A DNA stretch of 64,000 nucleotides. Source: Isurus oxyrinchus. Taxonomy: Eukaryota. Below are positions 17,180 through 63,800 of this stretch, in pieces. The DNA lies in the NCBI GenBank assembly GCA_026770705.1, contig JANJGN010000140.1, forward strand, positions 62,001-126,000. The letters are read 5' to 3'. The notes below the pieces were generated by a model that saw nothing but the letters and a program-made list of their open reading frames with translations, made no database searches and was not told the origin of the DNA. How positions within the stretch are numbered: the stretch's first letter is position 1; each line of letters starts with the position of its first letter. The position numbers were made by a program, and so were the translations under genes.

Positions 17180-19470
17180 AACAAAGAACAAACAACAAAG
17201 AAAAGTACAGCACAGAAACAGGCCCTTCGGCCTTCCAAGCCTGCGCCGATCATAGAGCTCGTAACTAAAACATTTTGCACTTCCCGGGTCCGTATCTTTC
17301 TATTCCCATCCTATTCATGTATTTGTCAAGCTGCCTCTTAAACACCACTATTGTACATGCTTCCACCGCCTCCTCTGGCAGCGAATTCCAGATACTCACT
17401 ACCCTCTGCTTAAAAAAACTTGCCCCGCACAAATCCTCTATAGTTTTCTCCTCTCACCTTAAATCTATGTCCCTATTAATTGAATCTTCCACCCTGGGAA
17501 AAAGCTTCCGACTATCTACTCTGCCCATGCCACTCATAATTTTGTAAACTTCTATCAAGTCACCCCTCAATCTCCGTTGCTCTAGTGAGAACAATCCGAG
17601 TTTCTCCAAACTCTCCTCATAGCTAATAACCTCCAGAGCAGGCAGCATCCTGCTAAACCTCCTCTGTACCCTCTCCAACGCCTCTATATCCTTTGTTAAT
17701 GTGGCGACCAGAATTACACGCAATATTCCAAGTGTGGCCTAACCAAGGTTCTATACAGCTACAGCATGACTTCTCAGTTTTTATACTCAATACTCCTGCC
17801 AATGAAGGGAAACATGCCGTATACCTTCCTGACTACCTTATCCACCTGCGTTGCCACTTTCAGTGATCCGTTGACCTTTAGACCCAGATCCGTCTGCCCG
17901 TCGATGCACTTAAGAGTTCTGCCATTTGCTATATAATTCCTGCCTGTATTAGACCTTCCAAAATGCATTACCTCGCATTTGTCCGGAGTAAACTCCATCT
18001 GCCATTTCTTCGCCCAAGTCTGCAACCGATTTATATGCTGTTGTATCATTTGACAATCCTTCTTTACTATCTGCAACTCTCCAACCTTAGTGTCTTCTGT
18101 AAATTTACTAATTAGACCAGTTACATATTCCTCCAAATCAGTTACGTATGCAGCAAACAGCAAAGGTCCCAGCACTGATCCCTGCGGAACTCCACTAGTC
18201 ACAGCTCTCCATTCTGAAAAGCATCCTGCCAATGCTACCCTCTGGCTTCTATGACCAAGCCAATTCTGTATCCACCTTGCCAGCTTACCTTTGATCCCGT
18301 GCAACTTTACCTTCTGTATACGTCTACCATGAGGGACCTTGTCAAAGGCCTTACTGAAATCCATGTAGATAACATCCACTGCCCTTCCATCATCGACCAT
18401 CTTTGTCACTTTCTCGAAAAACTCGATCAAGTTAGTGAGACCCGACCTCCCTTTCACAAAACCATGCTGCCTTTCACTAATACGCCCATTTGCTTCCAAA
18501 TGGTAGTAAATCCCGTCACAAAGAATCTTCTCCAATAATTTCCCTACCACTGATGTAAGGCTCACCAGCCTGTAATTTCCTGGATTATCCCTGCTACCCT
18601 TCTTAAACAATGGAACAACATTGGCCATTCTGCAGTCCTCTAGGACCTCTTCCGTAGCCAGTGAGGATACAAAGATTTCTGTCAAGGCCCCAGAAATCTC
18701 CTCCCTTGCCTCCCTCAGTACTCTGGGGTAGATCCCATCTGGTCCTGGGGACTTATCCACCTTAATATTCTTCAAGACGCCTAACACCTCCTCTTTTTTG
18801 ATCTCCACATGATCCAGGCTATCTACACACTCTTCCCTAGGCAAATCGACCTCTAAGTCCTTCTCGTTGGTGAATACTGATGAGATGTGTTCATTTAGTA
18901 TCTCTCCCATTTCTTCTGGCTCCACACACAGATTCCCACCTCTGTCCCTGTGTGGGCCAACCCTTTCCCTGGCTACCTTCTTGCTTTTTACATATGTTTT
19001 AAAGGCCTTGGGGTTTTTCCTTAATCCTAGTTGCCAGTGACTTTTCATGACCCCTTTTAGCCCTCCTGACTCCTTGCTTAAGTTTCTTAGTACTTTCTTT
19101 ATATTCTCCAGGGTCTTCATCTGTTCCCAGCCTTTTAGCCCTTACGAATGCTTCACTTTTCTTTTTGACTAATCTCACAATATCCATCGTTATCCACGGT
19201 TCCTGAAACTTGCCATGCTTATCCTTCATCCTATCAGGAACTTGCCGGTCCTGAACTCTTATCAACTGACGTTTGAAAGCCCCCGACATGTCCATTGTTG
19301 ATTTGCCCTCAAACATCCGCCTGCAGTCTAGATTCCTCAGCTCCTGTCTAATATTGTTCTAATTAGCCTTCCCCCAATTAAGCACCTTAACCCGATGAAT
19401 CCTGTTATCCTTATCCACTAGTACCTTGAAACCTATTGAATTATGGTCAGCTTTCCCGAAATGCTCCTCT
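17180..19470 (-). mobile_element. 5'-truncated CR1 LINE with reverse-transcriptase domain
   Basis: 448-aa ORF 17774-19120 with KSPGPDGI, NYRLVSLTS, QHGFVKG, YMDFSKAFDKVPH, GVPQGSVLGP and FTEDTK (degenerate FADD); frameshifted C-terminus (ORF 17454-17723); short tandem tail at 17180-17205. Confidence 0.95.
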
Positions 19471-22210: not shown

Positions 22211-23817
22211 AGCACAACAGCAAACGGCAAAGACGAATTGAAGGGCCACATCAATACTAAGGGAACGGTTTCATTATCTTTGTGTCAAACAGCAGATGCC
22301 ATGACTGGGACATGTGAAAACATAGGCCCTGTCACCGAGCTCCAATACTCAGTGAACATCTCAGAGCTTCCAAGCGATTTTGGAGGTGGTAAAACAGAAT
22401 TGACGGAGCGAGTAACCACAGTTCAGAGATATCCAGGAAAATTCACAACCCTTTCATTCTGAAAGATGTTCAGAACGTGAATCTTCGCCATTTCTTCCTG
22501 AAAGACATAGGTAGAATATTTCGAAAGAAAGGAAGTAACCCTGGAAAACACGCTGACTCACCAAACCTGGATTCACTGTGCAATATCTATTCTCCTAATA
22601 ATCTGGATTTGTAAGTCTAATGATGACCACGGAATCATTGCCAGTTGCAGTGAATAAACCCATATGTTTCACTAATGTGCTTTAGGGAGGGAAATCTGCC
22701 GCCTTTACCTGGTCTGGCCTACATCTGACTCCAGGCCCACATTTATGTGGTTGGCTCTTAAATGCCCCTGAACAAGGGCAATTAGAGCAGGACAATAAAT
22801 GCTGGCCAACGTCCTACTAAGGAATAAAACAAATGTTAAAAATATCAATTTTTCCCCAGTGTCTCAGTGCGAAGAGTTTCTGCCCGTGCAGTGGCCAACG
22901 AACACGAGGCAATGGAATTGATAAAAGCTAATCAGCACAGCTCAGAGCCAGGTTAAACATAGCAAGGGTTCAATTCCAATCCCACACGATGCAATAATCG
23001 AATGCCGAGAACCATAAATGCTGCAAATCTGAAATAAAAGAACAGAACATTCTGGAAAAGTAAAGGATAGCTGGTTAGGATGCCTCTCAGTGGAGAGCTA
23101 ACGTTTCAGATTGATGAAATTTTATCCCAACTGGAAATGCTGGAAGTGACGTAAGTCTTCTTCAATGATTTGGTGGGATTTTGTGTGTTTCACTGTATGG
23201 GACCTGGTTAACTTTTGCAGCCAGTGTGGGGTCCATGGCGTAAGGTGTTGGCGGATGATAGTTCCCATGGATATTTAAAGAAAACCTTGTGATTTCGTTT
23301 TGCAAAACATCAGATGCCTTGTCTGGGGTCACAAGAACCAGGTAACATTCTCCGGAATACTGGGGTAAGAGCGGGACAGGGGGATTCTCTCGGTGTCCTG
23401 GGCCCACATTCCACCTTTAACAAACACCACCCAATGCAAACACATGCACCGACCTCCCAGTTTATCACTGTGGGGAAAGGAATGCAACAGCACAACTGGC
23501 AGAAAGAAAAGCTCCCCTCCCCCACCCCTGTACCCCAGAATATTGTGGGAGGGGCTTTCACATCCTGATCACAATCCAAATGTAGAGTCAGAAAATTGCA
23601 GCCTCCTTTTATAAACCTATCTCTTATTCACACAGCACTTAGCCACCTATCCGGGAATCATGCGACCCATCAATGATCTCAGCGAAACTGCCCTGTACAA
23701 ATAAACTCGATCCCCCGAAAATATTTCAGTCCAGCTCAGAGGTCCGGTTTCCCAGTGCACTCCAGGGCTGCAGTCTCCAGCTCCCCGTCAAATAAACCCT
23801 CAGTTCCAGGCAGCAGA

Positions 23818-23863
23818 ATGATGGGAATCTTTCTTGTTTTCACCCTGTGTGAATGTTTACCCC
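23818..23863 (+). CDS. NAR-TCR V leader exon (cassette 1)
   Basis: MMGIFLVFTLCECLP C|gtgagt, phase 1; aaataaa TATA-like element ~25 nt upstream. Confidence 0.85.
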
Positions 23864-24009
23864 GTGAGTACCGATCAAACAAACGACATTGTGTGGATTT
23901 AATAGTAAGCTGCCCGAGCCCATCCCAATTACAGACAATGTCTGGGGTTTAACCCCGTTCTGTGAATCTGCTCTGATGCTCCATTAAACTCTCTCTGTTT
24001 AATTTCCAG

Positions 24010-24299
24010 GCTATTTCAGTCAGTCATTGACACAGACCCCGGCAGCGGTGACCAGGAAGGAGTGTCAGTCTCTCACCATTACCTATGTTTTCTATGGTGG
24101 TTTTTACGCTCGACATTTGACGGGCGGGGATTTCTTCAGAAAAACCCAGACCGGGACAGAGCGGGAGCGGATCTCCAGCGGAGGAAGATTTGTTGAGTCG
24201 TTGAATAAAGCACAAAAGACATTTTCGCTGGAAATTCGGGATGTGAGAGTTGAAGACACCGCCACCTATTTCTGTAAAGCTCAGTACGAGTACGAAGAA
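24010..24299 (+). CDS. NAR-TCR V exon (IgNAR-like V lacking CDR2); open frame but probably defective
   Basis: SLTQTPAAVTRKECQSLTITYVFYGG...FFRKTQTGTERERISSGGRFVESLNKAQKTFSLEIRDVRVEDTATYFCKAQY resembles the VNAR framework (ERISIGGRYVE..SFSLRI.DLRVED..TY.CKA). Extra FR1 Cys at 24063; canonical Cys23 is TAT at 24084. Weak RSS CACGACG 24300-24306 + 22 + ATAAAAACT. Confidence 0.9.
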
Positions 24300-24665
24300 C
24301 ACGACGACGGGTCTCGGTTTCCCGCGATATAAAAACTCTCACTGCAGATTATTACAGAATCAAATAAAAAAACGGAGTTAATCTGCAGTTAAACCCCCCA
24401 CGGTTCCGCCTCACACCGCCTGCCCCACAGTCTAGTGTATAATGAGATTGGATTATTGCCGTTAACATCTTGAGTTTTATAAATGTCGAGTGTGTGCGGA
24501 TGGCGATGTCTTTGCCGGGATTGGTGTCAGTGAATGGGGATTGGGAATGACTAATCCCAGTTACAAACCTCTAACACCAGATGTGATCCTGGTCTAACAG
24601 CTGGAACCGGGAACCGCAGTCCCAGCTGTTTACCTAGTATCCCCACAGCGCACCAAGTACCCAGG

Positions 24666-24738
24666 GGATTTCATGCTGACTTGTAACATTGTGTGTTTGG
24701 ATGGGTAAGTCACAGTTGAAGAGACTTGAGCAAATATC
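24666..24738 (+). other. NAR-TCR D segment (24694-24710) flanked by 12/12 RSS
   Basis: GGATTTCAT + 12 + CATTGTG | TGTTTGGATGGGTAAGT | CACAGTT + 12 + GCAAATATC. Confidence 0.75.
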
Positions 24739-25054
24739 TCTCCACAATCACAGTATAAATTCTCCAGTCCCGGACAGTGAATTGTCGGGTTGATGTTATT
24801 GTTGCTATAATCTGGTTACATTTCATTGTAATTTCCACCATTCAGTTATCTTTCTTTAATCATTTTTCTCGGTTTATATGAAGAGAACATTTCGTTCCCG
24901 GGACCATTTACTCAGAGCTCAGGGCCTCACAAAGAACAGTTTGAACAGACAGAGACTTTAAAATATTGAATATTGTTTATTTATTTATATCCGCTGAATA
25001 ATTGGGCAGTTTCTACTGTCTGATGATGATTCCCCAGTAGTTTGAGTTGTCGGT

Positions 25055-25137
25055 GGTTGTTGTACCGGGGACACTGAGAGTGGTGTCACTGTGGTGGGTT
25101 ACTAAATATTATTCTGTGGATGGACCCAGGAAAGCTG
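25055..25137 (+). pseudogene. NAR-TCR J segment (25094-25137) with 23-RSS; 15-nt internal deletion
   Basis: GGTTGTTGT + 23 + CACTGTG; WVTKYYSVDGPRKA G|gtaata versus DYVDGSGTVVTVTA G|gtaag in the paralogous J at 40358-40410. Confidence 0.8.
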
Positions 25138-26029
25138 GTAATAACTCCAAACCTCGCCGGGTTACCGACTGTCCCTTGTAATGTTCACCGTCAGTTTATT
25201 ATTGATATCGGTTGGGTTTGGGGGGATGTGGGAGTTGACGGAATCTGGACCATTATTAGTTTAACGGGCACATTGGGGACAACATCAACATCTTGGACTC
25301 TCACACTTTGAATCGCTTTTAATGAGAGCAGATTGTCAGCAATCCGGACTCCACTCCCAGTGTTAATTGTGACCGAGGGAGCTCTGCCTGTCCCTTAGAG
25401 CTGGGAAGCGGGCTGACAGATCTCTCTCCTGGGCAGCAGTTTGCAGTCCGAGCTGCACAATGTGAATGAGGAACCGGGTGAATAAACTTAACATAACTGC
25501 GGCCAGTTCGGATACCTGACCCAGGAGTAAAACAAGCAAGTGATACAATGGACTTCAGATATAAGAGGTCCTGATGTGGGTCTACATGGAATTTTATTAT
25601 TGGATAATCAGTGACTGAAATTAGTGACAATGCCCCCGCCATTTGTTTCAATTGTCTTCAGAAAACCAATTACTTTCCTCCCTTTCTGACCTCAGACCGA
25701 AATGTGAAAGTTTGGAACTGCTGACACTTTATTATCTTGAATGTAGATGTTTGAGAGATGGGATTGCTGTAATTTTTCTGTATCCCTGATTACTGTTAAT
25801 GGAAACAACAAAATGCAGTGAGATAGTGAGGATAACGCATTAATCTTATAAAGGAGAACAAGAACATAGGGAACAATTATAAACTGGGGCCATGTTCATT
25901 TAGAACCAGCAAGAAATAGCTCAGCGAAAGGGGGAGAAGGATTGTATGACCTCTGGGCGCCTTCCAAAGTACAATCCGGCTACGTGGTGGGTGAGCTTTA
26001 TGGAGAGAAGGACTGAAATAGACTGAAAT

Positions 26030-26570
26030 GCTGTGTAAAGTTTTGGTCTCATTACTGAAGAGAGAACCATCTGCTTTGGAAGGAGTGCAACAAAGGCTCA
26101 CCAGACTGATTCCTGAGATGAAGAGGTTGTCCATTGTGAAATGATTGAGTAGTCTGGGCCTGTATTCCCTAGAGTTTAGGAGAATGAGAGGTGATCTAAT
26201 CAAAAAATATAATATTCTTCAGGGACCTTGACTGGGCAGATACTGGGTCGCAGTTTCTCCAGGCTGAGGAGTATAGAACTCAGGGTCACAGCTTCAGAAC
26301 AAAGGATCATCCATTAGAACTGAGAAACGGAAAATAATCTTGAGAAGAACTATTGTTGTGAACCTGTGGCATTCTGTAACTCAGAGAGCGGTGGGTGTTC
26401 AGTATCACCGTGTATACAAGGCAATATTCGACAGATGTTTGGATACTAACAGAATCAGGGGATATTGGGGGAATGTGGGAATGTGATGTTGAGGTTGAAA
26501 ATCAGCAACCATATTACTGAATGGCTGAGCAGGTTTGAAAGGAGATCTGGCGCCTCCTGCTTCTATTCGA
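26030..26570 (+). mobile_element. Old CR1 3' fragment in the J-to-supporting-V intron
   Basis: caaaggctcaccagactgattcctgag...gagtttaggagaatgagaggtgatct; a copy at the equivalent position in cassette 2 (38930-39430, -). Confidence 0.7.
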
Positions 26571-27984
26571 TGCTCTACTTTGATTTTCTACAGGCCTGAG
26601 AAAAGAAATCAGCAGCATTCCACATCTCTCTGGGAAGTTGAAGCCGGCTGGACCTTTTTTCTCTGGACAAAAGGGAAACACTGGGAAAATTAATAGAAAC
26701 CTTTCAAACAATGAGCGGTTTTAGTCTGGTGAAATTGTTTATTTGTGGCTGAGGCCAAAGCAATGGACCATCAAAATATTAACAGGACAAAGAAGAATAT
26801 TAAGACAAATAATTTTTAACAAAGACAAGTCAGAGTATGGAACTTGCTGTCCCAGGGAGTGCTTGCAGATATTACTGATATATTTACGGAACAGACCGAC
26901 CCAGGGAGCTGGATGGAAATGGTCAGTTAAGTTTCGGTGGGGATTAGGTTGGAATTGAGTCTATGCACAGGTTGAATGGCCCATTCCTCTTTTGCGTTCT
27001 TTTTCCTCCATAATGTTAAAATTGAGGGAAAACTCCGCCCAGTGAACCCGGGAAAGAATCAGTTAACGTACGGAAAGAATTGAAATTGTCAGAGAGCCGG
27101 AAGAGGCAGTTCCCAGTGAGTAACAGTAAAACCACTGCGGAAACTGAATAGACTGAACCCAACAGACAACTGAGAGAGTTTGGGACAAGTTCCCACGATT
27201 GCAAAAAGCGCAAACAGCACAAAGTAAATGTGAAAAAAGGAAATGTGAAATAAAATAAATAAAATTAAATTAATTGTAAATATTTCAAATGAACTGAACT
27301 GCAGAAGATTGGACCCTATTGATAAAACTTAGCGAAATAGAGCACCAGGCCGTGAGAAATGCCCGAGCACTTATAAACCGCAGGAAATGATTGACCTTTG
27401 GCCACTGATGTTTGGCTTTGGCCCAATTGGTGCTGATGATTCCCATCGGTTTTGTGTTGGGTCTTGCTGTGATGCCACACAGCTGTATTTCTCTCTAACA
27501 AACATTTTTTTTTTTGGAAATCGGTTGCCTCATTGATCATAAAATATTCCCTCGGGTTTGTCTCTCATTAGGGATAATACACACAGGGATGTAATTTTAT
27601 TCATAGAATTATCTGGCCCATCGTGTAGGCGCCGACGCTTTAGAAGTGCAAACCAATTGTTCCTACGGCCCATTAACTTTCTCCATCGCTCTATATTTTT
27701 ATTTACATTTCCAGTACAGATCCATTACCTGCTTCAAAGTTACAATGGAATCTGTTCCCACCACCAATTCAAACGGTGCATTCTTCATGAGGAGAATTCG
27801 CTATGGAAAAAAAATCACTTCATTCCCAACTTTATCATATTTTAATAACAGTGAATACGGTTCAAACAGGCTTCAAACGAATAAAATTACCACAAAAAGC
27901 AGAGCTATTCAAGCGATCGACAACTTCTCCTGGACAAACAGTGGATAAACAAAAAGATAATGTTCATTTTTTTTGATTCTCCAG

Positions 27985-28290
27985 ATTCCAGTTCCATGAT
28001 TTCCCGGGATCCGCTAGTACAAATCTCTGCTGCCTGTGACACCGTTACTTTAAACTGTGAATATTCAGGGTTCTGTCCATACACAGTACACTGGTATCGT
28101 CTGTCACCCGGACAGGCTCCGGAATATCTGCTTCAGAGACACACTTCAGGAGAGGAGAATAAAGAAAATGCCGTCGAGGGGAGAATTTCTGCTTCTATCG
28201 AATCCGTCGAGAAAATCAGCCGGTTAAAAATCTCCAAACTACAATGGAGCAACTCCGCTGTGTCTTACTGTGCATTGAGTCGGCGTGCAG
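27985..28290 (+). CDS. Leaderless supporting TCR-delta V of NAR-TCR (cassette 1)
   Basis: tctccag|AT is phase 1, matching the NAR-TCR J donor. DSSSMISRDP...VTLNCEYSGFCPYTVHWYRLSPGQAPEYLL...NSAVSYCALSRRA with CDR1 Cys at 28074; no leader found upstream. RSS CACAGTG 28291-28297 + 23 + AGAAAAGCC. Confidence 0.92.
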
Positions 28291-28703
28291 CACAGTGATA
28301 CAGAGCATGGAGAGAGCTGTAGAAAAGCCTGAACATGGTGGGATTACAGAAGGACCAACAGTAGCTGAATCTCCTTCAACGCTCGTGCAATAGCCTACGG
28401 GATGGTACCAACTGCTCTCAACACAGCCCCCCTCCCTCCTCCCCACCCCGTGATGTTAACCTGGGTCCACCCGACATCACCACCCCCACAGCCTCCCGGC
28501 CCTGGACCCTTACCCCCTTTCCCATTGTGTCAGTATCGCCCTGTTTTCTCCTCCTGGATATTCAGGGATTTGTACCCTCCCCAGTGCACCCAGGACCGCA
28601 TAATAAAGTCACGTCCCGTGTATTCACCGGCCTGATCCATCTCCCAGACAAGGGAGCAGCTTTGCCCAGAGATGTGGAGGGGGTGGGTAACATGGATCTT
28701 GTG

Positions 28704-30239: not shown

Positions 30240-30349
30240 GTGAGTATAACCTGTTGGTATCTATTTGAGAAGACTCATTCGGCAAACAGAAATTATTGCA
30301 AAAAGGGGGGGCAGGGGGCGGTGAATTTCAAACTGCCGTCCAGAATGAT

Positions 30350-31220
30350 GAGCCTGGGGAATTTATTTGCGGGGTGGGGTGGGGGGGGGTGGTAATTTGT
30401 GGAGGGGAGAATTTGGGCCTGGGGGGTAAATTTGCGGGGGGTAAATTTGCACGGTGTGGAATTTGCAGAGTGACAGAATCTGCAGGGGGAATTTACACAG
30501 GTGGAAAATTGCGGGGAGAGAGAATTTGCACGGGGGGGGAAACTTGCACATGGGGGAAATTTGCATGGCTTGAATTTGTGGGGGTGGAATTTGCGCAGGA
30601 GGGAATTTGCCGGGCGGGAAGACATTTGTACAAGGAGAAATTTAAGGTGGGGGAAATTTTCGCAGCGGAAAATTTGTGAGGGGGGAGTTTGCACAGAGGG
30701 AAAATCGCACGAGCGAATTTGCAGTGGGGAGATAATTTGGAGGGATAAATTTGCAGGGGCAAACTTGCAAGTTGGGAAATTTGCAGGGGGAAATTTTTCA
30801 GGGGGAGTAAATTTGCATGGGGGAGAAATTTGCGGGAGGTGGAAATTTGCAAAGGGCCAATTTGCGGGGAGAGGATTTTTCATGGGGGGAAACTGTGGGG
30901 CTGGAAAGGAGAATAGAACCTACAGGGGCTGAATTTGCGGAGGGGAATTTGTGGGGAAGTAAGTTTGCACAGTTTGTAATTTGCACAGAGGGGAATGTGC
31001 GGGGGGAGGTCGAATTTGTGGATGTGGTATTTGCACATGAGGGAATTTGCACAGGGTGGAAGTTGCAGGTGGGGGAAATTTGCTCATGGAGGATTTTGCC
31101 GGGGGGGAGGGTGGATTTGTGGGGTGGAAAGAACCTGCAAGGGGGATTTTGCACTGGTGGAAAACTGCGGGGAGGGGGACTTTGCAAGGGCGAGAATTTG
31201 CAGGGGCGTAAATCTGTGGG
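30350..31220. repeat. Degenerate G-rich tandem repeat, core GGGGGAAATTTGCA
   Basis: Dozens of ~15-20-nt variants of gggg(g)aaatttgc(a/g); strongly G-skewed on the + strand. Confidence 0.9.
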
Positions 31221-31415
31221 AGAGAAAGAAAAAATAGAGATAGAAGAAAGAGAAAAAGAGACATAAAAGAAGAGACAGAGAAAGAAGAAAGAGAAAGAGA
31301 GAGACAGAGAGAAAGGGAGAGAGAGACAGAGAGAAAGAAAGAGAGAGACAGAGGAAAAGAGACAGAGAGAGAAGATGCTCAATTGAAAGACAGAGAAAGA
31401 AGCAGAAAGGCAGAG
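31221..31415. repeat. (AG)-rich polypurine tract
   Basis: agagaaagaaaaaatagagatagaagaaagagaaaaagag... Confidence 0.85.
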
Positions 31416-31553: not shown

Positions 31554-31693
31554 NNNNNNNNNNNNNNNNNNNNNNNNNNNNNNNNNNNNNNNNNNNNNNN
31601 NNNNNNNNNNNNNNNNNNNNNNNNNNNNNNNNNNNNNNNNNNNNNNNNNNNNNNNNNNNNNNNNNNNNNNNNNNNNNNNNNNNNNNNNNNNNN
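31554..31693. other. Assembly gap (N run) within a (GATG)n-like tract
   Basis: Run of N, flanked by degenerate (GGAT)n extending to ~31945. Confidence 1.
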
Positions 31694-35867: not shown

Positions 35868-36206
35868 TGTATTTGTACAGATGTCTCCATGCTCTGTATC
35901 ACCGCGCTATGCGTCGACTCAGTGCACAGTAATACACAGCGGAGTCACTCAGTTGTGGTTTGGAGATCTTTAACTGGCTACTTTTCTCGGCCGAATTGAT
36001 AGAAGCAGAAATTCTCCCCCTGGCAGCGTTTTCTTTCTTCTCCTCTCCTGAAGTGTGTCGCTCAAGCAGGTATTCCTGTCCTGGAGATTGACAGTACCAG
36101 TGTACTGTGTACTGACAGAACCCTGAGTATTCACAGTTTAAAGTAACGGGGTCACCGGCAGCAGAGGCTTGGAAATGCGGACTCTGGGATACCAGAGAAC
36201 TGGAAT
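35868..36206 (-). CDS. Leaderless supporting TCR-delta V (cassette 2), exon 35907-36206, with damaged RSS
   Basis: DSSSLVSQSP...VTLNCEYSGFCQYTVHWYCQSPGQEYLL...SDSAVYYCALSRRI; open frame, 6-nt FR2 deletion versus copy 1. Heptamer CGCGGTG (35900-35906) + 23 + ACAAATACA. Confidence 0.9.
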
Positions 36207-39200: not shown

Positions 39201-40357
39201 AGTTATAGACTTAACACCCTGGGGAAACACCCACCGAGAATCTATACTGTCCTGGAAGTTAAATGTTCCAATGAAATTACATGTCATTCCTCTAAACTCT
39301 TGGGAACATAGACCCAGCCTACTCAACCTCCTCTTACAGGACAATCCCTTTATCTCACGAATCAGACTGATGAACCTTTGTTGCACTAGCTCCAAGACAA
39401 GGAGGTCCTTCCTTAAGTAAAGAGATCATAACTTTACACAACATTCCAAACTGGAGTCCATTTCAGTCATTCCTCCATGCACCTCACCAACTAACATGGG
39501 CTCGGATTGTAATTTGAATGGGCCAGAGACCCTCCAATCCTTCTCTCCCTTGCGATTAATTATTTCTTGCTGCTTCGAAATGAACATTCCCCCAGATTGT
39601 AAATGTTTCCTAAGGTCCCTGTTCTCCTTTATAAGATTAATACACAATCCTCAGTCTCTCAGTGCGCTGTGCTGTTTTAATTAACAGTAATCAGGGACAC
39701 AGATAAATTACAGCAATCCCATTTCTCAAACATTTACATTCAATATAGAGAAATGTCTGCAATTCCAAACCTGCACATCTGACAGCGGAAAAGGAGGAAA
39801 GTGATTGGTTATATGATGGCAACTGAGAGAAGTGGCGGGGTCAATGTCACTAATTTTAGTCACTGGTTGCCCAATCATAAAATTCCATCTGGACCCACAT
39901 CAGGGTCTTATATCTGAAGTCCCTTGGGTCACTCTCCCATTTCTCTCCCGGGTCAGGTATTGAACGAGCCGCTGCAGGTATCTGAACTGGCCATAGTTGT
40001 GTTGAGTTTATTCACTCGGTACCTCATTCACATTGCTCAGGTCGGACTGCAATCTGCTGCCCAGTAGAGAGATCTGTGACCTCGCTCCCGGGCTCTAACG
40101 GACAGACAGAGAGCCCTCGGTCACAGTTAACACCGGGAGTGGAGTCCGGATTGTCGACAATCTGCGCTCATTAAAAACGATTCAGAGTGTGAGAGTCCGT
40201 GATGTTGATGTTGTCCCCGATGTGCCCATTAAACCAATAATGGTCCAGATTCTGTCAACTCCCACATCTCACCCAAACTCCACTGATATCAATAATAAAC
40301 TGACGGTGAACATTACCCGAGACAGGCTGTAACCTGGCGGTGTTTGGAGTCACTTAC

Positions 40358-40449
40358 CGGCTGTGACAGTCACCACCGTCCCGGATCCATCCACATAATC
40401 TTATTTTCAGCACAGTGATCCCGCTCTCAGTCTCTCCGGTACAACAATC
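40358..40449 (-). other. NAR-TCR J segment (coding 40358-40410) with 23-RSS (cassette 2)
   Basis: GATTGTTGT + 23 + CACTGTG; ...DYVDGSGTVVTVTA G|gtaagt. Two in-frame stops in the first 10 nt would have to be trimmed. Confidence 0.85.
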
Positions 40450-40762
40450 ATTGACACCTCAAACTGCAGGGAAATCATCATCAGACAGTAGAAACTGCCC
40501 AGTTATTGAGTGGATTAAAATAAGTGTAAAATATTCAATGTTTCAAAGCTTCTGTCGGTTCAAACTGTTCTTTGTGAGGCCCTGAGCTCTGAGTAAATGG
40601 CCCCGGGAAGGAGATGTTTGCTTCATATAAACCGAGAAATTATCAAAGAAAGATAACTGAATGGTGGAAATTACAAGAAATATAACCAGATTACAGTGGT
40701 AATAACATCAACCCGACAATTTCCTATCCGGGCCCAGAGAATTTAAACAGTGATCGTACAGA

Positions 40763-41273
40763 GATATTTGCTCCGGTCTGCCCCACTCTGACTGTACCGC
40801 ATGCTGTACATATACAGAGCTTTACAGTAATAGGTGGTGGTGTTTCCAACTCTCAGATCCCTAATTTCCAGCGAAAATGTATTTTCTGCTTTATTCACCG
40901 ACACAACAAATCTCCCCTTGCTGGAGATCCGCTCCCGGTCTGGGTTTGTCTGAAGAAATCCCCACCCGTCAAAGGATGAGAGAAAAAGCCACCATAGAAA
41001 ACGCAGGTGATGGTGAGAGACTGACACTCCTTCCTGGTCACCGCTGCCGGGGTCTGTACCACTGACTGACTGAAAGACCCTGGAAATTAAACAGAGAGAG
41101 TTTAATGGACCATCAGAGCCGAACCACAGAGCGGGGTCAAAACCCCGGACATTGTCTGGAATTGGGATGGACTCGGGCAGCTTTATATTAAACAAACACA
41201 ATGTCGGTTTGTTTGATCGGAACTCACGGGGTAAACGGACACACAGGGTGAAAAGAAAGAGAACTCCAATCGT
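40763..41273 (-). pseudogene. NAR-TCR V pseudogene fused to D (VD), followed by 12-RSS (cassette 2)
   Basis: Leader 41228-41273 has ATG ATG mutated to ACG ATT. Exon 40791-41079 SVVQTPAAVTRKECQSLTITCVFYGG..., 10-nt frameshifting deletion in FR2, ...TYYCKALYMYSMRYS, then CAGAGTG + 12 + GCAAATATC. Confidence 0.9.
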
Positions 41274-61539: not shown

Positions 61540-61931
61540 TCATTGACATGAATTAACGGTGTCCATCAGTGCAAGGGAAATATTCACAAAACTCGGTTTA
61601 CCGCTGGATTTATCAACCGTTCTGTTGATGATCTTCAAGGGGATCGCTTCATGTCCCACCACACAGGAGTAAGAAGCGCCGCTGGCCCACTCCTCCGCTG
61701 CAATGGATAACAGGCTGTACATGAAGAAGGAGCGATTGCCGTTCTCCGCCACCACCTCGGTGTTCTTGTAGTTTCCGGGATTCACCGGCTTGTCATTGAC
61801 GGTCCACTTGACGAAGATCTCTCGGGGGGAGAAACCTCTCACTAAGCAGCTGAGGGAGACGTACCTCTGAGCGGAGACATCTTCTGCCGAGGGCAGGAGG
61901 ACAGACACGGATGGTTCCTGCGGATTTTTGT
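61540..61931 (-). CDS. IGHM: IgM heavy chain CH4 + secretory tailpiece
   Basis: [43 protein letters not shown]...[43 protein letters not shown]; internal donor G|GTAAAC at 61602/61601 for the membrane form; penultimate Cys. Confidence 0.97.
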
Positions 61932-62638
61932 CTGCAGAAAATGTACAATAAATGTCAATAAACTGGATAATTTCGGAGACAATGAAACCACTGGTTAGGG
62001 TGAGGGATGTGTTTTTGAGTTGAATAGTAAAAGTTTACATTATCCACTTCTAGGAAATATATCGCCATTCCTTTACTGTCGCTGAGGCAAAATCCTGGAA
62101 CTCCCTCCCTGACAACACTGTGCATTTACCTACACCACAGGGATTGCAGCGATTCAAGAAGTCAGCACACCACCACCTTCTCAAGGGCAATTAGGGATGG
62201 GCAATAAACTCTGGCCCAGCCAGGGACGCACACATCCCATTAATTAATAAATAAAAATCTTTGGGATCTGATCGGTTTTCCAGCTCGGAGCAGAGGTGGA
62301 TACAATCCTTTTCCCTGAGAACTTATGGGGTTGGACTAGAAAGTTTCTCAAAGTTTACAGCACAGAACAGGCCATTCGGCCCAACTGGTCTGTGTTGGTG
62401 TTTAAGCTCCACACCAGGCTCTTCCCATCTTTCTTCATCGAAATCCAAAAGCACAGCCTTCAATTCATTGCTCATTCATCTACTTATCAATTTCCTCCTT
62501 GAAGTCTGCAGGCCCAGAGCCTTTAGCTAGTGGAATTGCCAATCCGGGTAGACCATGAACACACTGAATAGTAAATATTGACCCTTGCACTGGAAGTAGA
62601 CACAATGACTCACTTATTGTTTCAATCTCACCGCTCAC

Positions 62639-62947
62639 CTTGTTCCTTGTGGATGGAACTCCTTAAAGGAGTCGGCAGATCCTGATTGCTCACCACGCAG
62701 TAGAACTCAGCCCCACTCAGCCAGGCTTGTGTCGAGATGTTTACGTTGCTGACCACGCTGCCGGGATGCTCTCCCGGTTGGACGGCAATCTCTGATTTCA
62801 AAGGCTTCTTTTCTTGGGTCCAGGACACGAGTACTGGTTGATGAGCATCAGAAACGATGCAGGTTAAGGTCACCGTCGCTTCCAGCAAGACCTGTTCTAT
62901 TGGCGGTGGCAGTAGAGTAATTGTGGCATCTCTGCAGTTGGAACATT
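62639..62947 (-). CDS. IGHM: IgM heavy chain CH3
   Basis: cacag|[33 protein letters not shown]...VSWTQEKK...[30 protein letters not shown]|gtgag. Confidence 0.96.
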
Positions 62948-63299
62948 CTGTGAGACAGAAATGAAAATCAACCAAAGTTTCACCATGAGAATCAGGACAG
63001 CAGTATTCAGTCTTCACTCTCCAAAGGACATTCGACATATCAATCTCTAACTATCGTCTGTAATCGTCTTTACACAATGCAAAACCAGCTTGGTCTGTGT
63101 AAATTGTTCTCATAATTTCAGTCATTTAGCCCTGGAAACATTCTAGCGAACCCGTGTTGCCCCAGTCCCAATACAAATACACCATTCCCGGGCCCTGGAA
63201 TGCAGTACTGAATGGCGCTTTATGAATAGGGTGGATGCACTTTCCAGCACTTTATTCCGAAGCTATTACCAGTTACTTTAATGGGTTTGTATCTCTTAC

Positions 63300-63587
63300 C
63301 AGACCCGGTGGTGTTTCGACTTAGGGTGACCCCTTGATGAGTGACCTGACAGGTATAGACCGCGCCGGTGAGCAATTCCCCAGCGGAGACTTTCAGCCGA
63401 CTGGTCGCCGAGAAGTTCCCGTTCATTTCAAAGGCGGGAGATGTGACAATTCCTGAACTCATGGGTTGTCCATTCTTCAGCCACTTCACGGTGATTGGCT
63501 TTGGACGGAAATCGATGATTGAACAGACTACGGTTTCTTCCCGGCAACTTACGGTTAGGAGAACAGCTGGAGGGTGGATGTCAGTAC
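63300..63587 (-). CDS. IGHM: IgM heavy chain CH2
   Basis: gaag|[40 protein letters not shown]...SATSRLKV...[21 protein letters not shown]|gtaag. Confidence 0.95.
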
Positions 63588-63800
63588 CTTCAAAAAACAC
63601 AGGTTAAACATTTCTTGCAGAAGAAATTGATAACAGATACAATGAGGTCCTATATTTTAACAGGCTTTTTCCGTTAACAGACAATAACCTGGATTTTTCA
63701 GGGATCAAAACTATGCAGAGCACTATAAATGCGTTACAACCAAGGCCCCATACAGGTTAGTCACAGCCTTTCTGTTTCTCAGAGGTTCCCCAACACTTAC

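What the first reader, a model, noticed from the sequence alone, without database searches (positions are those of the whole stretch)
40763..40830. Germline-joined V-D in a NAR-TCR cassette (fossil RAG coding joint)
Seen: cassette 1 reads TGTAAAGCTCAGTACGAGTACGAAGAA [RSS and intervening DNA, 394 nt] TGTTTGGATGGGTAAGT CACAGTT-12-GCAAATATC. Cassette 2 reads TGTAAAGCTCTGTATATGTAC AGCATGCGGTACAGT CAGAGTG-12-GCAAATATC, and downstream homology continues to the J. Both inner RSSs and all intervening DNA are gone, with only a few nucleotides lost from each coding end, as in a V(D)J coding joint. Established: germline-joined genes are known in shark IgH, IgL and IgNAR clusters and in marsupial TCR-mu. 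I do not recall one described for NAR-TCR. Inference: RAG acted on this TCR-locus cassette in germ cells, and the gene later decayed.
Basis: partly seen in the sequence, partly recalled or inferred. Interest (0 to 1): 0.8.

Follow-up and report, generated by a model that had tools for sequence, protein, structure and literature searches.

The report
Inherited V-D fusion in shark NAR-TCR
In a shark T-cell-receptor locus, one dead copy of the antibody-like NAR variable gene has its V and D pieces already fused in inherited DNA, right beside an unfused sister copy; this is the footprint expected if the lymphocyte cut-and-paste enzyme once worked in germ cells.

Summary
The window holds two NAR-TCR cassettes (NAR V, D, J, leaderless supporting V-delta) in inverted orientation. 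Cassette 1 (+, 23.8-28.3 kb) is unjoined. Cassette 2 (-, 41.3-35.9 kb) lacks the 394 nt that hold the V 23-RSS, the spacer DNA and the 5' D 12-RSS. Homology runs at 83-90% on both sides of that gap. Both breakpoints fall in coding ends, at most 6 nt from the V heptamer and about 7 nt into the 17-nt D. The 3' D 12-RSS and the J 23-RSS remain, so the gene is a VD-J form. Contigs from another sample of the same organism and from a second organism bridge the junction. A third organism has a diverged V that also runs into a D-3'-type RSS.

The best reading is an inherited RAG-type V-to-D coding joint (0.72). An ordinary deletion is not excluded, because the only unjoined comparator is 15% diverged.

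Both cassettes are dead. Cassette 2 has no ATG, a 10-nt frameshift and two spoiled heptamers.

Germline joining is classic for shark Ig genes. No paper I could search reports it for NAR-TCR, but three key papers were not held. This scan had already noted VD- and VDJ-joined NAR-TCR genes elsewhere in this genome. Moderate interest.

The parts
41228..41273 (-). Cassette 2 leader-exon remnant. Both ATGs of cassette 1 read ACG and ATT here, so there is no start codon. The donor GTGAGT follows at 41227.
   Evidence: alignment columns 39-46
40791..41079 (-). Cassette 2 NAR V exon fused to D (289 nt). A 10-nt deletion near 40936 shifts the frame: the N-terminal half is in one frame and the FR3-CDR3 half in another.
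   Evidence: All 11 of 11 relatives keep the stretch that is deleted here.
40791..40826 (-). VD junction: Cys codon and V end to 40806, three letters AGC of unknown origin 40805-40803, D-derived letters 40802-40791.
   Evidence: Two abutting 6-nt palindromes lie at 40810-40799.
40763..40790 (-). Retained 3' D 12-RSS: CAGAGTG-12-GCAAATATC. The third base of the heptamer is mutated.
   Evidence: Homologous to cassette 1 24711-24738.
40411..40449 (-). Cassette 2 J 23-RSS (nonamer GATTGTTGT, 23-nt spacer, heptamer CACTGTG as read on the - strand).
40358..40410 (-). Cassette 2 J segment, intact (…VDGSGTVVTVTA), with donor GTAAGT at 40357.
   Evidence: The same J motif occurs in 13 of 14 gene models.
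35900..36206 (-). Cassette 2 leaderless supporting V-delta exon (open frame, extra Cys in GFCQYT). Its RSS heptamer is spoiled (CGCGGTG, 35906-35900).
23818..24299 (+). Cassette 1 (unjoined comparator): leader 23818-23863, intron, NAR V exon 24010-24299. The frame is open but Cys23 is Tyr.
24300..24693 (+). The 394 nt that cassette 2 lacks: V 23-type RSS CACGACG-22-ATAAAAACT (24300-24337), intervening DNA, and 5' D 12-RSS (nonamer 24666-24674, heptamer 24687-24693).
24694..24738 (+). Cassette 1 D (17 nt, 24694-24710) and 3' D 12-RSS CACAGTT-12-GCAAATATC.
25055..25140 (+). Cassette 1 J 23-RSS (25055-25093) and a J remnant. The remnant lacks 16 nt relative to cassette 2, so the GSGTVVTV motif is lost.
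27985..28329 (+). Cassette 1 supporting V-delta exon (27985-28290) with an intact RSS, CACAGTG-23-AGAAAAGCC.

Best explanation
Cassette 2 is a germline VD-joined (VD-J) NAR-TCR cassette. An ancestral cassette was built like cassette 1: V with a 23-RSS, a D flanked by 12-RSSs, J with a 23-RSS, then a splice to a leaderless supporting V-delta. In germ-line cells it underwent one V-to-D recombination of the V(D)J type. The cuts fell at the V heptamer and at the 5' D heptamer. The signal-ended 394-nt piece was lost, and the two coding ends were joined after a few nucleotides of trimming or addition.

The product kept the 3' D 12-RSS facing the J 23-RSS. It could therefore still have completed its V domain in one somatic step.

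The copy in this window is now dead. Its start codon is lost, it has a 10-nt frameshift, the D RSS heptamer reads CAG, and the supporting-V heptamer reads CGCGGTG.

Shown here: the structure, the breakpoints to within a few nucleotides, presence of the junction in other samples, and the decay. Inferred: that RAG made the cut, that it happened in germ cells, and the order of joining and decay. The join may be older than this cassette and may be shared with copies in related species.
For: 1. The cassette identity is established.
- The best solved-structure matches of the V are VNAR domains (8hgi_C, E 1.1e-17).
- The RSS pattern is V-23, 12-D-12, 23-J (with the V RSS read by eye).
- The J donor and the leaderless V-delta match NCBI shark gene models that read …DGSGTVVTVTA|DSSS….

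2. The missing DNA is exactly the RSS-to-RSS interval.
- V-side homology runs to 6 nt before the cassette 1 heptamer.
- D-side homology resumes 7 nt into the 17-nt D.
- Flanks are 83-90% identical.
- Under a crude model of two random breakpoints between the V exon start and the J, both landing in these coding ends has P about 3e-4.

3. The leader intron is kept (89.7% identity). This excludes a processed cDNA copy.

4. Other samples carry the junction.
- X5, another sample and study of organism A: a whole 162-nt contig lies on 40763-40924 with 2 differences.
- X6, organism B: a whole 246-nt contig lies on 40647-40892 with 4 differences and no gaps.
- Both bridge the junction with more than 31 letters on each side.

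5. Organism C (X7) has a V-like contig that leaves the window at 40801. Its 30 visible loose letters, reverse-complemented by hand, match cassette 1 D end plus 3' D RSS (24703-24732) at 21 of 30 ungapped. The 15 letters after its heptamer match the cassette 1 V-RSS spacer at only 2 of 15. That copy is therefore VD-joined too.

6. There is precedent. Shark Ig clusters are partly (VD-J) or fully joined in the germ line, and this is ascribed to RAG in germ cells (PMC4279169 and PMC5192425, passages; PMC2193156, abstract).
Against: - The only unjoined comparator is 12-15% diverged, so the ancestral V end and D of cassette 2 are unknown.
- The aligner can also place the junction letters AGCATGCG on cassette 1's AGAACACGACG (V end plus heptamer) with three gaps. 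If that alignment were right, heptamer remnants would survive and the left breakpoint would not be a RAG cut.
- No N/P assignment is secure. The palindrome GCATGC at the boundary is compatible with a 3-nt P addition. However, 22-nt zones with at least 2 palindromic hexamers make up 1.9% of this window, and the neighbouring TGTACA overlaps a family-conserved Tyr codon.
- The read evidence is contigs only. Tissue, read fractions and the organisms' names are unknown. No listed piece of X1, the probable source sample, bridges the junction, though only the longest pieces are listed.
- The cassette is a pseudogene, so no function can be argued. dN/dS of the two NAR V exons is 0.85.
Confidence: 0.72

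Rival explanations
1. Ordinary deletion. A roughly 400-nt deletion by end joining or replication error happened to remove the V RSS, the intervening DNA and the 5' D RSS of an already inactive cassette.
For: Cassette 2 carries other small deletions: 10 nt in the V, flanked by a CGGGA repeat in cassette 1. The alternative alignment of 8 junction letters to the V end plus heptamer is possible. The cassette is dead, so nothing would select against such a deletion.
Against: Both breakpoints fall within a few nt on the coding side of two heptamers, with rough P about 3e-4. No direct repeat brackets the deletion. The 3' D RSS is left exactly in place. A second, diverged copy in organism C has the same V-to-D architecture.
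Confidence: 0.15
2. The join did not happen in this cassette. It was inherited by duplication, or copied by gene conversion, from an older VD-joined NAR-TCR cassette. This is still a germline join, but an older one made elsewhere.
For: Organism C has a diverged V-like contig that shares the junction position and then runs into a D-3'-type RSS. dS differs between the NAR V exons (0.15) and the supporting V exons (0.39) of the two cassettes, which may hint at conversion among NAR V exons. Earlier scan notes report other D-less, 12-RSS NAR-TCR V genes in this genome (unchecked).
Against: Flanks on both sides of the junction are co-linear with the neighbouring unjoined cassette 1 at similar identity (83-90%). 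No mosaic boundary is visible at this resolution.
Confidence: 0.08
3. Artefact. The assembly captured a somatic V-to-D rearrangement from lymphocyte DNA, or it mis-assembled the region. The two cassettes converge on an N gap at 31554-31693.
For: An N gap lies between the inverted cassettes. The tissue of the source DNA is unknown.
Against: Junction-bridging contigs occur in two other samples from different studies. Cassette 2 differs from cassette 1 by 10-17% everywhere, so it is not a rearranged cassette 1. The junction lies about 9 kb from the gap.
Confidence: 0.03
4. Reverse polarity. The joined form is ancestral, and cassette 1 gained its RSS-flanked 394-nt piece by insertion (RAG-type transposition).
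For: None specific. It is the classic 'relic' alternative discussed for shark fused genes (PMC2193156, abstract).
Against: There is no target-site duplication at 24299/24694. Unjoined V with a 23-RSS is seen in a distant shark: P0004, Chiloscyllium, reads through CACAGTG-23 by back-translation. NAR-TCR is described as doubly rearranging (PMC5931798, passage).
Confidence: 0.02

Closest known systems
Partly germline-joined (VD-J, VD-DJ) shark IgM heavy-chain clusters
   Same: V and D are fused in inherited DNA, the remaining RSS faces an unjoined J, and the event is ascribed to RAG activity in germ cells (PMC5192425 and PMC4279169, passages). The RSS logic is the same IgH type: V-23, 12-D-12, 23-J.
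   Different: Here the gene is the NAR V unit embedded in the TCR alpha/delta V region. It splices to a supporting V-delta, not to an Ig constant gene. This copy is a pseudogene.
Nurse shark type III IgNAR clusters (D1-D2 germline-fused)
   Same: A partial germline join in the closest relative of this V family (PMC4622739, passage). The V here matches VNAR structures best.
   Different: That is a D-D fusion in an Ig cluster with three D segments. Here a single D is fused to the V in a TCR cassette.
Fused VJ NS4 light-chain genes of nurse shark (Lee et al. 2000)
   Same: Joined and split paralogues are compared side by side, and the joined ones are concluded to result from recent RAG-like germline rearrangement with hairpin intermediates (PMC2193156, abstract).
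   Different: That work had close paralogues, a population survey and expression data. Here the comparator is about 15% diverged and the P-nucleotide evidence is only suggestive.
Marsupial TCR-mu germ-line joined V exon
   Same: A pre-assembled V in a three-domain TCR chain that is structurally analogous to NAR-TCR (PMC3457774, passages).
   Different: In marsupials the supporting (second) V is fully joined, probably via retrotransposition. Here the N-terminal NAR V is only VD-joined and keeps its leader intron.
Pre-joined V-J in the TRD locus of the newt Pleurodeles waltl
   Same: A germline-joined V region inside a TCR-delta locus (PMC12698447, passages).
   Different: The newt gene is a complete V-J join, it is expressed, and it makes up a third of TRD clonotypes. 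The shark copy is a partial join, is dead, and has no expression data.

Membership tests
NAR-TCR cassette (doubly rearranging TCR-delta with an N-terminal NAR V) | N-terminal V domain of the NAR type | tested here: met
   The cassette 1 V exon matches VNAR chains best (8hgi_C E 1.1e-17, 2ywy_A 5.3e-17) and Pfam V-set. The cassette 2 V is 87.6% identical to it.
NAR-TCR cassette (doubly rearranging TCR-delta with an N-terminal NAR V) | Own D and J segments with RSSs next to the V | tested here: met
   Cassette 1: V-22/23, 12-D-12, 23-J. Cassette 2 keeps only the D 3' 12-RSS and the J 23-RSS.
NAR-TCR cassette (doubly rearranging TCR-delta with an N-terminal NAR V) | J ends in a splice donor and is followed by a leaderless supporting V-delta with its own RSS | tested here: met
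   J…TVTA|GTAAGT. The supporting V exons begin after an acceptor and read DSSS… in phase. The same order is seen in 14 shark gene models. The supporting-V heptamer is intact in cassette 1 and spoiled in cassette 2.
NAR-TCR cassette (doubly rearranging TCR-delta with an N-terminal NAR V) | Use with TCR-delta D, J and C | not testable with these tools
   There is no C-delta match in the window (C part of P0015 unmatched). One Mustelus model (P0015) continues into a C region. No transcripts were examined.
Germline-joined antigen-receptor gene (RAG-type coding joint in inherited DNA) | Both facing RSSs and all DNA between them are absent, with flanks co-linear with an unjoined relative | tested here: met
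Germline-joined antigen-receptor gene (RAG-type coding joint in inherited DNA) | Breakpoints at the heptamer/coding borders, with only coding-end trimming or N/P additions | tested here: inconclusive
   Breakpoints lie within 6 nt or less (V) and about 7 nt (D) of the borders. The comparator is about 15% diverged, a rival alignment keeps heptamer remnants, and the palindromes are only suggestive.
Germline-joined antigen-receptor gene (RAG-type coding joint in inherited DNA) | The joined form is the inherited state (non-lymphoid DNA, several individuals) | tested here: inconclusive
   Bridging contigs occur in X5 (another sample of organism A) and X6 (organism B). These are contigs only, the tissues are unknown, and no read fractions are available.
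Germline-joined antigen-receptor gene (RAG-type coding joint in inherited DNA) | Not a processed copy (introns kept) | tested here: met
   The leader intron is present with GT..AG and is 89.7% identical to that of cassette 1.
Marsupial-type retro-copied joined V (TCR-mu) | Fully joined, intronless V exon | tested here: not met
   The intron is kept, the J is still separate, and an RSS remains.

The most novel reading that the evidence does not exclude
The NAR V units inside the shark TCR alpha/delta locus have been substrates of germline V(D)J recombination more than once. This has left a graded series of unjoined, VD-J and (per gene models and earlier scan notes) VDJ forms. This cassette pair is a fossil 'before and after' of the first step. 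That would extend germline RAG activity from shark Ig clusters to a T-cell-receptor locus. It would also mean that part of the NAR-TCR repertoire is, or was, built with one rearrangement step or none.
Probability: 0.55. Interest if true: 0.6.

Novelty: new member of a known kind. Interest (0 to 1): 0.45.

Why it matters
Germline-joined genes are the main evidence that RAG can still reshape inherited genomes. So far they are textbook material for shark Ig loci, marsupial TCR-mu and, recently, a newt TRD gene. A VD-J intermediate in a NAR-TCR cassette sits next to an unjoined sister with co-linear flanks and keeps the downstream RSS. It points to the recombinase rather than to retro-copying, and it places the process in a shark TCR locus. 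This copy is dead and has no function itself. Its value is as a dated, readable junction. It also gives a reason to census all NAR-TCR cassettes for intact VD-J and VDJ forms, which would change how the diversity of this receptor is thought to be generated.

Tried and rejected
Related shark DNA. The other DNA collections hold microbes, viruses, plasmids or E. coli and were not tried.

Protein searches.
- The V exon alone gave 4 proteins of 4 candidates.
- The 65-aa VD read-through piece gave no candidate. This is a blank within 0.55-1.75 of its length only.
- The 229-aa genomic ORF, scored on residues 165-229, gave 14 of 17 candidates. None carries the cassette 2 junction.
- I did not run the big all-against-all protein search. 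The operators asked to spare it, and its 50%-identity clusters could not separate cassettes.

Second copy of the excised interval. I looked for the 394-nt interval elsewhere in the window as a sign of reinsertion and found none.

P nucleotides. I considered them as proof. Two abutting palindromic hexamers are rare in the window (11 abutting pairs of 63,989 positions). But one overlaps a conserved V codon, so I rejected them as decisive.

IgNAR cluster. I considered and rejected this reading. There is a single D, and the J splices to a leaderless V-delta.

Somatic artefact and insertion polarity are covered under the rivals.

Papers.
- 'nar-tcr' + 'germline-joined' returned 7 papers. I read passages of all 7, and in each the two terms occur apart.
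- 'nartcr' + 'germline' returned 2 papers, both with passages read.
- 'germline-joined' + 'shark' + 'tcr' from 2015 returned 6 papers. I read passages of 5; PMC8355894 was not opened.
- 'nar-tcr' from 2019 returned 14 papers, 13 listed, judged by title only.
- None describes a joined NAR-TCR gene.
- Supplements were not consulted. Table S1 of PMC12227049 may list such genes.

Full report
WHAT IS IN THE WINDOW

The window is part of a shark TCR alpha/delta V region.
- tblastn with two shark gene models finds exactly two NAR-type V exons (23973-24290 on +, 41101-40749 on -). It finds two supporting V-delta exons (27978-28295 on +, 36207-35902 on -) and weaker TCR-V-like matches near 5.0, 8.5, 13.9, 33.1 and 42.7 kb. 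There is no C-delta.
- Self-BLAST shows that the two NAR units belong to one large inverted duplication. The matched blocks are 23421-24286 ~ 41668-40813, 24701-26713 ~ 40802-38775, 27012-27237 ~ 37168-36945 and 27709-28348 ~ 36471-35848.
- The two arms converge on a region that holds an N run at 31554-31693. I left the N runs alone.
- Other notes of this scan call the genome a lamnid shark. I could not check the species, because run and organism names were coded.

THE CASSETTES ARE NAR-TCR CASSETTES

- The cassette 1 V exon (96 aa) matches solved VNAR domains best (E 1.1e-17 and following) and Pfam V-set.
- A consensus RSS scan plus reading of the sequence gives the cassette 1 layout. The V is followed by CACGACG-22-ATAAAAACT. 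This RSS was read by eye and scored below the scan threshold, at 4 of 7 heptamer matches. A 17-nt D lies between two 12-RSSs. The J lies behind CACAGTG-23-ACAACAACC. The supporting V is followed by CACAGTG-23-AGAAAAGCC.
- This is the IgH/IgNAR type of RSS logic.
- The J of cassette 2 reads …VDGSGTVVTVTA and ends in GTAAGT. The supporting V exon starts after an acceptor and continues in phase as DSSS….
- Fourteen NCBI gene models have the order leader, NAR V, CDR3, DGSGT…-type J, then [DE][SF][SNR]S-type supporting V; 13 of the 14 have DGSG. They come from basking shark, white shark, starry smooth-hound, zebra shark and two catsharks.
- White shark P0008 is 80% identical to the cassette 1 V and shares its CDR1.
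- I searched exons apart and did not join exons into a spliced model.

THE OBSERVATION

- In MAFFT and BLAST alignments, cassette 2 follows cassette 1 through promoter and leader (82.7%), leader intron (89.7%) and V exon (87.6%) up to the letters GTAC, 6 nt before the cassette 1 heptamer.
- It picks up again inside the D. Cassette 2 40802 downward aligns with cassette 1 24701 onward, which is 7 nt into the 17-nt D.
- It then runs on through the 3' D RSS to the J RSS (85.0%) and beyond (84.8%).
- Three letters (AGC, 40805-40803) belong to neither side.
- The nonamer GCAAATATC is identical in both cassettes.
- The 394-nt interval has no other copy in the window.

So cassette 2 has V fused to D, with a 12-RSS facing a 23-RSS J. 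It is a VD-J gene that would still obey the 12/23 rule.

IS THIS MORE THAN AN ORDINARY DELETION?

Arguments for a recombinase-type coding joint:
- Both breakpoints sit on the coding side of two heptamers.
- Under a crude model of two random breakpoints between the V exon start and the J, that has P about 3e-4.
- No direct repeat brackets the gap.
- The downstream RSS is untouched.
- The leader intron is kept, which rules out a processed copy.

Arguments against certainty:
- Cassette 1 is 12-15% diverged, so the true ancestral ends are unknown.
- The aligner can also lay AGCATGCG on cassette 1's AGAACACGACG (V end plus heptamer) with three gaps. This is less parsimonious than the D alignment (10 to 12 letters with two one-letter gaps) but is not excluded.
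- The junction holds two abutting 6-nt palindromes, TGTACA and GCATGC. Abutting pairs occur at 11 of 63,989 positions, and 22-nt zones with two or more palindromic hexamers make up 1.9% of the window. GCATGC would fit a 3-nt P addition to a D starting TGC.
- TGTACA, however, overlaps the Tyr codon that unjoined relatives also have. I therefore treat this as suggestive only.

IS IT INHERITED?

- X5 is a different sample and study of organism A. A whole 162-nt contig lies on 40763-40924 with 2 differences.
- X6 is organism B. A whole 246-nt contig lies on 40647-40892 with 4 differences and no gaps.
- Both bridge the junction with more than 31 letters on each side.
- X1 is probably the source sample. 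It has depth across the bin, but no bridging piece is among those listed, and only the longest are listed.
- X7 is organism C. One V-like contig matches up to 40801 and then runs on 'unlike' for 68 letters.
- I reverse-complemented the 30 visible X7 letters by hand. They read 8 D-like letters, a heptamer CACAGAG, a 12-nt spacer and the start of a nonamer.
- Those letters match cassette 1 24703-24732 (D end plus 3' D RSS) at 21 of 30 without gaps. The 15 letters after the heptamer match the cassette 1 V-RSS spacer at only 2 of 15.

So a diverged copy in a third organism is VD-joined at the same place. The join is therefore inherited and probably older than this cassette's lineage. This rests on one contig and 30 letters. 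Contigs cannot give read fractions or tissue.

DECAY

Cassette 2:
- Both ATGs of the leader are changed (ACG, ATT).
- A 10-nt deletion shifts the V frame. All 11 of 11 aligned relatives keep that stretch.
- The D RSS heptamer is CAGAGTG.
- The supporting-V heptamer is CGCGGTG.
- The J, its RSS and the supporting V frame are intact.

Cassette 1 is not healthy either:
- Cys23 is Tyr. Nine of the 10 relatives covering that column have Cys. The tenth, P0005, has an unrelated N-terminal part there.
- The V heptamer is weak.
- The J lacks 16 nt.

dN/dS between the two NAR V exons is 0.85 (dS 0.15, 90 codons). Between the supporting V exons it is 0.40 (dS 0.39, 98 codons). These are small samples. 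Whether the join came before or after inactivation cannot be told.

COMPARISON WITH WHAT IS KNOWN

- Partly (VD-J, VD-DJ) and fully joined shark Ig clusters are well known and are ascribed to RAG in germ cells (PMC5192425 and PMC4279169, passages; PMC2193156, abstract).
- Nurse-shark type III IgNAR has a germline D-D fusion (PMC4622739, passage).
- Marsupial TCR-mu has a germ-line joined supporting V, probably via retrotransposition (PMC3457774, passages).
- A newt TRD locus has an expressed pre-joined V-J (PMC12698447, passages).
- NAR-TCR is consistently described as doubly rearranging (PMC5931798, PMC4279169 and PMC12227049, passages).
- None of the papers found by four searches mentions a joined NAR-TCR gene.
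- The primary NAR-TCR papers (PMC1458790, PMC7039070, PMC7909615, and the catshark paper by DOI) were not held. Supplements were closed. 'Not in print' is therefore only provisional.

WITHIN THIS SCAN

The phenomenon is not new within this scan. Earlier notes on other DNA of the same genome report D-less NAR-TCR V genes with a 12-RSS (s1-869584, s1-864016) and fully VDJ-joined NAR-TCR exons (for example s1-868553, s1-869596). I did not test those.

What this window adds is an unjoined sister cassette with co-linear flanks on both sides, which shows directly what was removed.

In addition, the ORF P0001 (unnamed ENA contig) back-translates after its V end to CACAGTG-12-GCAAATACC. P0004 (bamboo shark) back-translates to CACAGTG-23. 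This hints that both states occur in other sharks, but back-translation is ambiguous.

VERDICT

This is a real, inherited VD-J form of a NAR-TCR cassette. It was most likely made by germline V(D)J-type recombination (0.72), and it is now a pseudogene. It is a new member of a well-known kind of event, and of moderate interest.

Noticed in passing
window 61540-63600 (- strand): Three Ig C1-set exons lie about 20 kb from the NAR-TCR cassette. The last one matches the IgM heavy constant mu CH4 plus tailpiece (PDB hits at about E 1e-44 over residues 4-121). [quoted passage not shown]
   Followed up: partly
window 23818-25140 (+): The unjoined cassette 1 is probably also non-functional. Cys23 of the V is Tyr (9 of 10 covering relatives have Cys), the V heptamer is CACGACG, and the J lacks 16 nt including the GSGTVVTV motif.
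   Followed up: partly
window 23421-28348 and 41668-35848, N run 31554-31693: The two cassettes form an inverted duplication whose supporting V genes face each other across an assembly gap. It could be a real palindromic duplication or a scaffolding orientation error. I could not tell which.
   Followed up: no
window 24010-24293 / 41079-40806 versus 27985-28290 / 36206-35907: Synonymous divergence between the two cassettes is 0.15 in the NAR V exons but 0.39 in the supporting V exons (small samples). This may indicate gene conversion among NAR V exons or a mosaic history.
   Followed up: partly
P0001 (unnamed ENA contig, 116-aa ORF) and P0010 (Mustelus asterias model): P0001 reads …YWYYTHGTPQW…. 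After the HGTP it back-translates to CACAGTG-12-GCAAATACC. P0010 has the same …WYYAHGTPQ… inside a complete V-J-supporting-V model. This hints at VD-J and VDJ versions of one cassette type in other sharks. A 23-RSS reading of P0001 is also possible.
   Followed up: partly
Read-laying run X7 (organism C), place 40801: A V-like contig continues into a D-3'-type RSS with an intact CAC heptamer (CACAGAG). A VD-joined copy with a possibly usable RSS may therefore exist in that species.
   Followed up: partly
alignment A2, family-wide: The whole NAR-TCR V family here has FF (…G-x-FF-[KR]-Q…) where V domains usually carry the conserved Trp. G39, F41 and F42 are invariant in 12 of 12 rows, so this is a family trait and not a defect of these copies.
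   Followed up: no
window 17774-19120 (- strand): A 448-aa open frame has a reverse-transcriptase-like look (…YMDFSKAFDKVPH…). It is probably a LINE fragment. This was judged by eye only.
   Followed up: no
window 30290-31400: A long low-complexity repeat is open in several frames (PANF/KFPP-like units), just before the N run. Another note of the scan calls it switch-region-like. I did not examine it.
   Followed up: no
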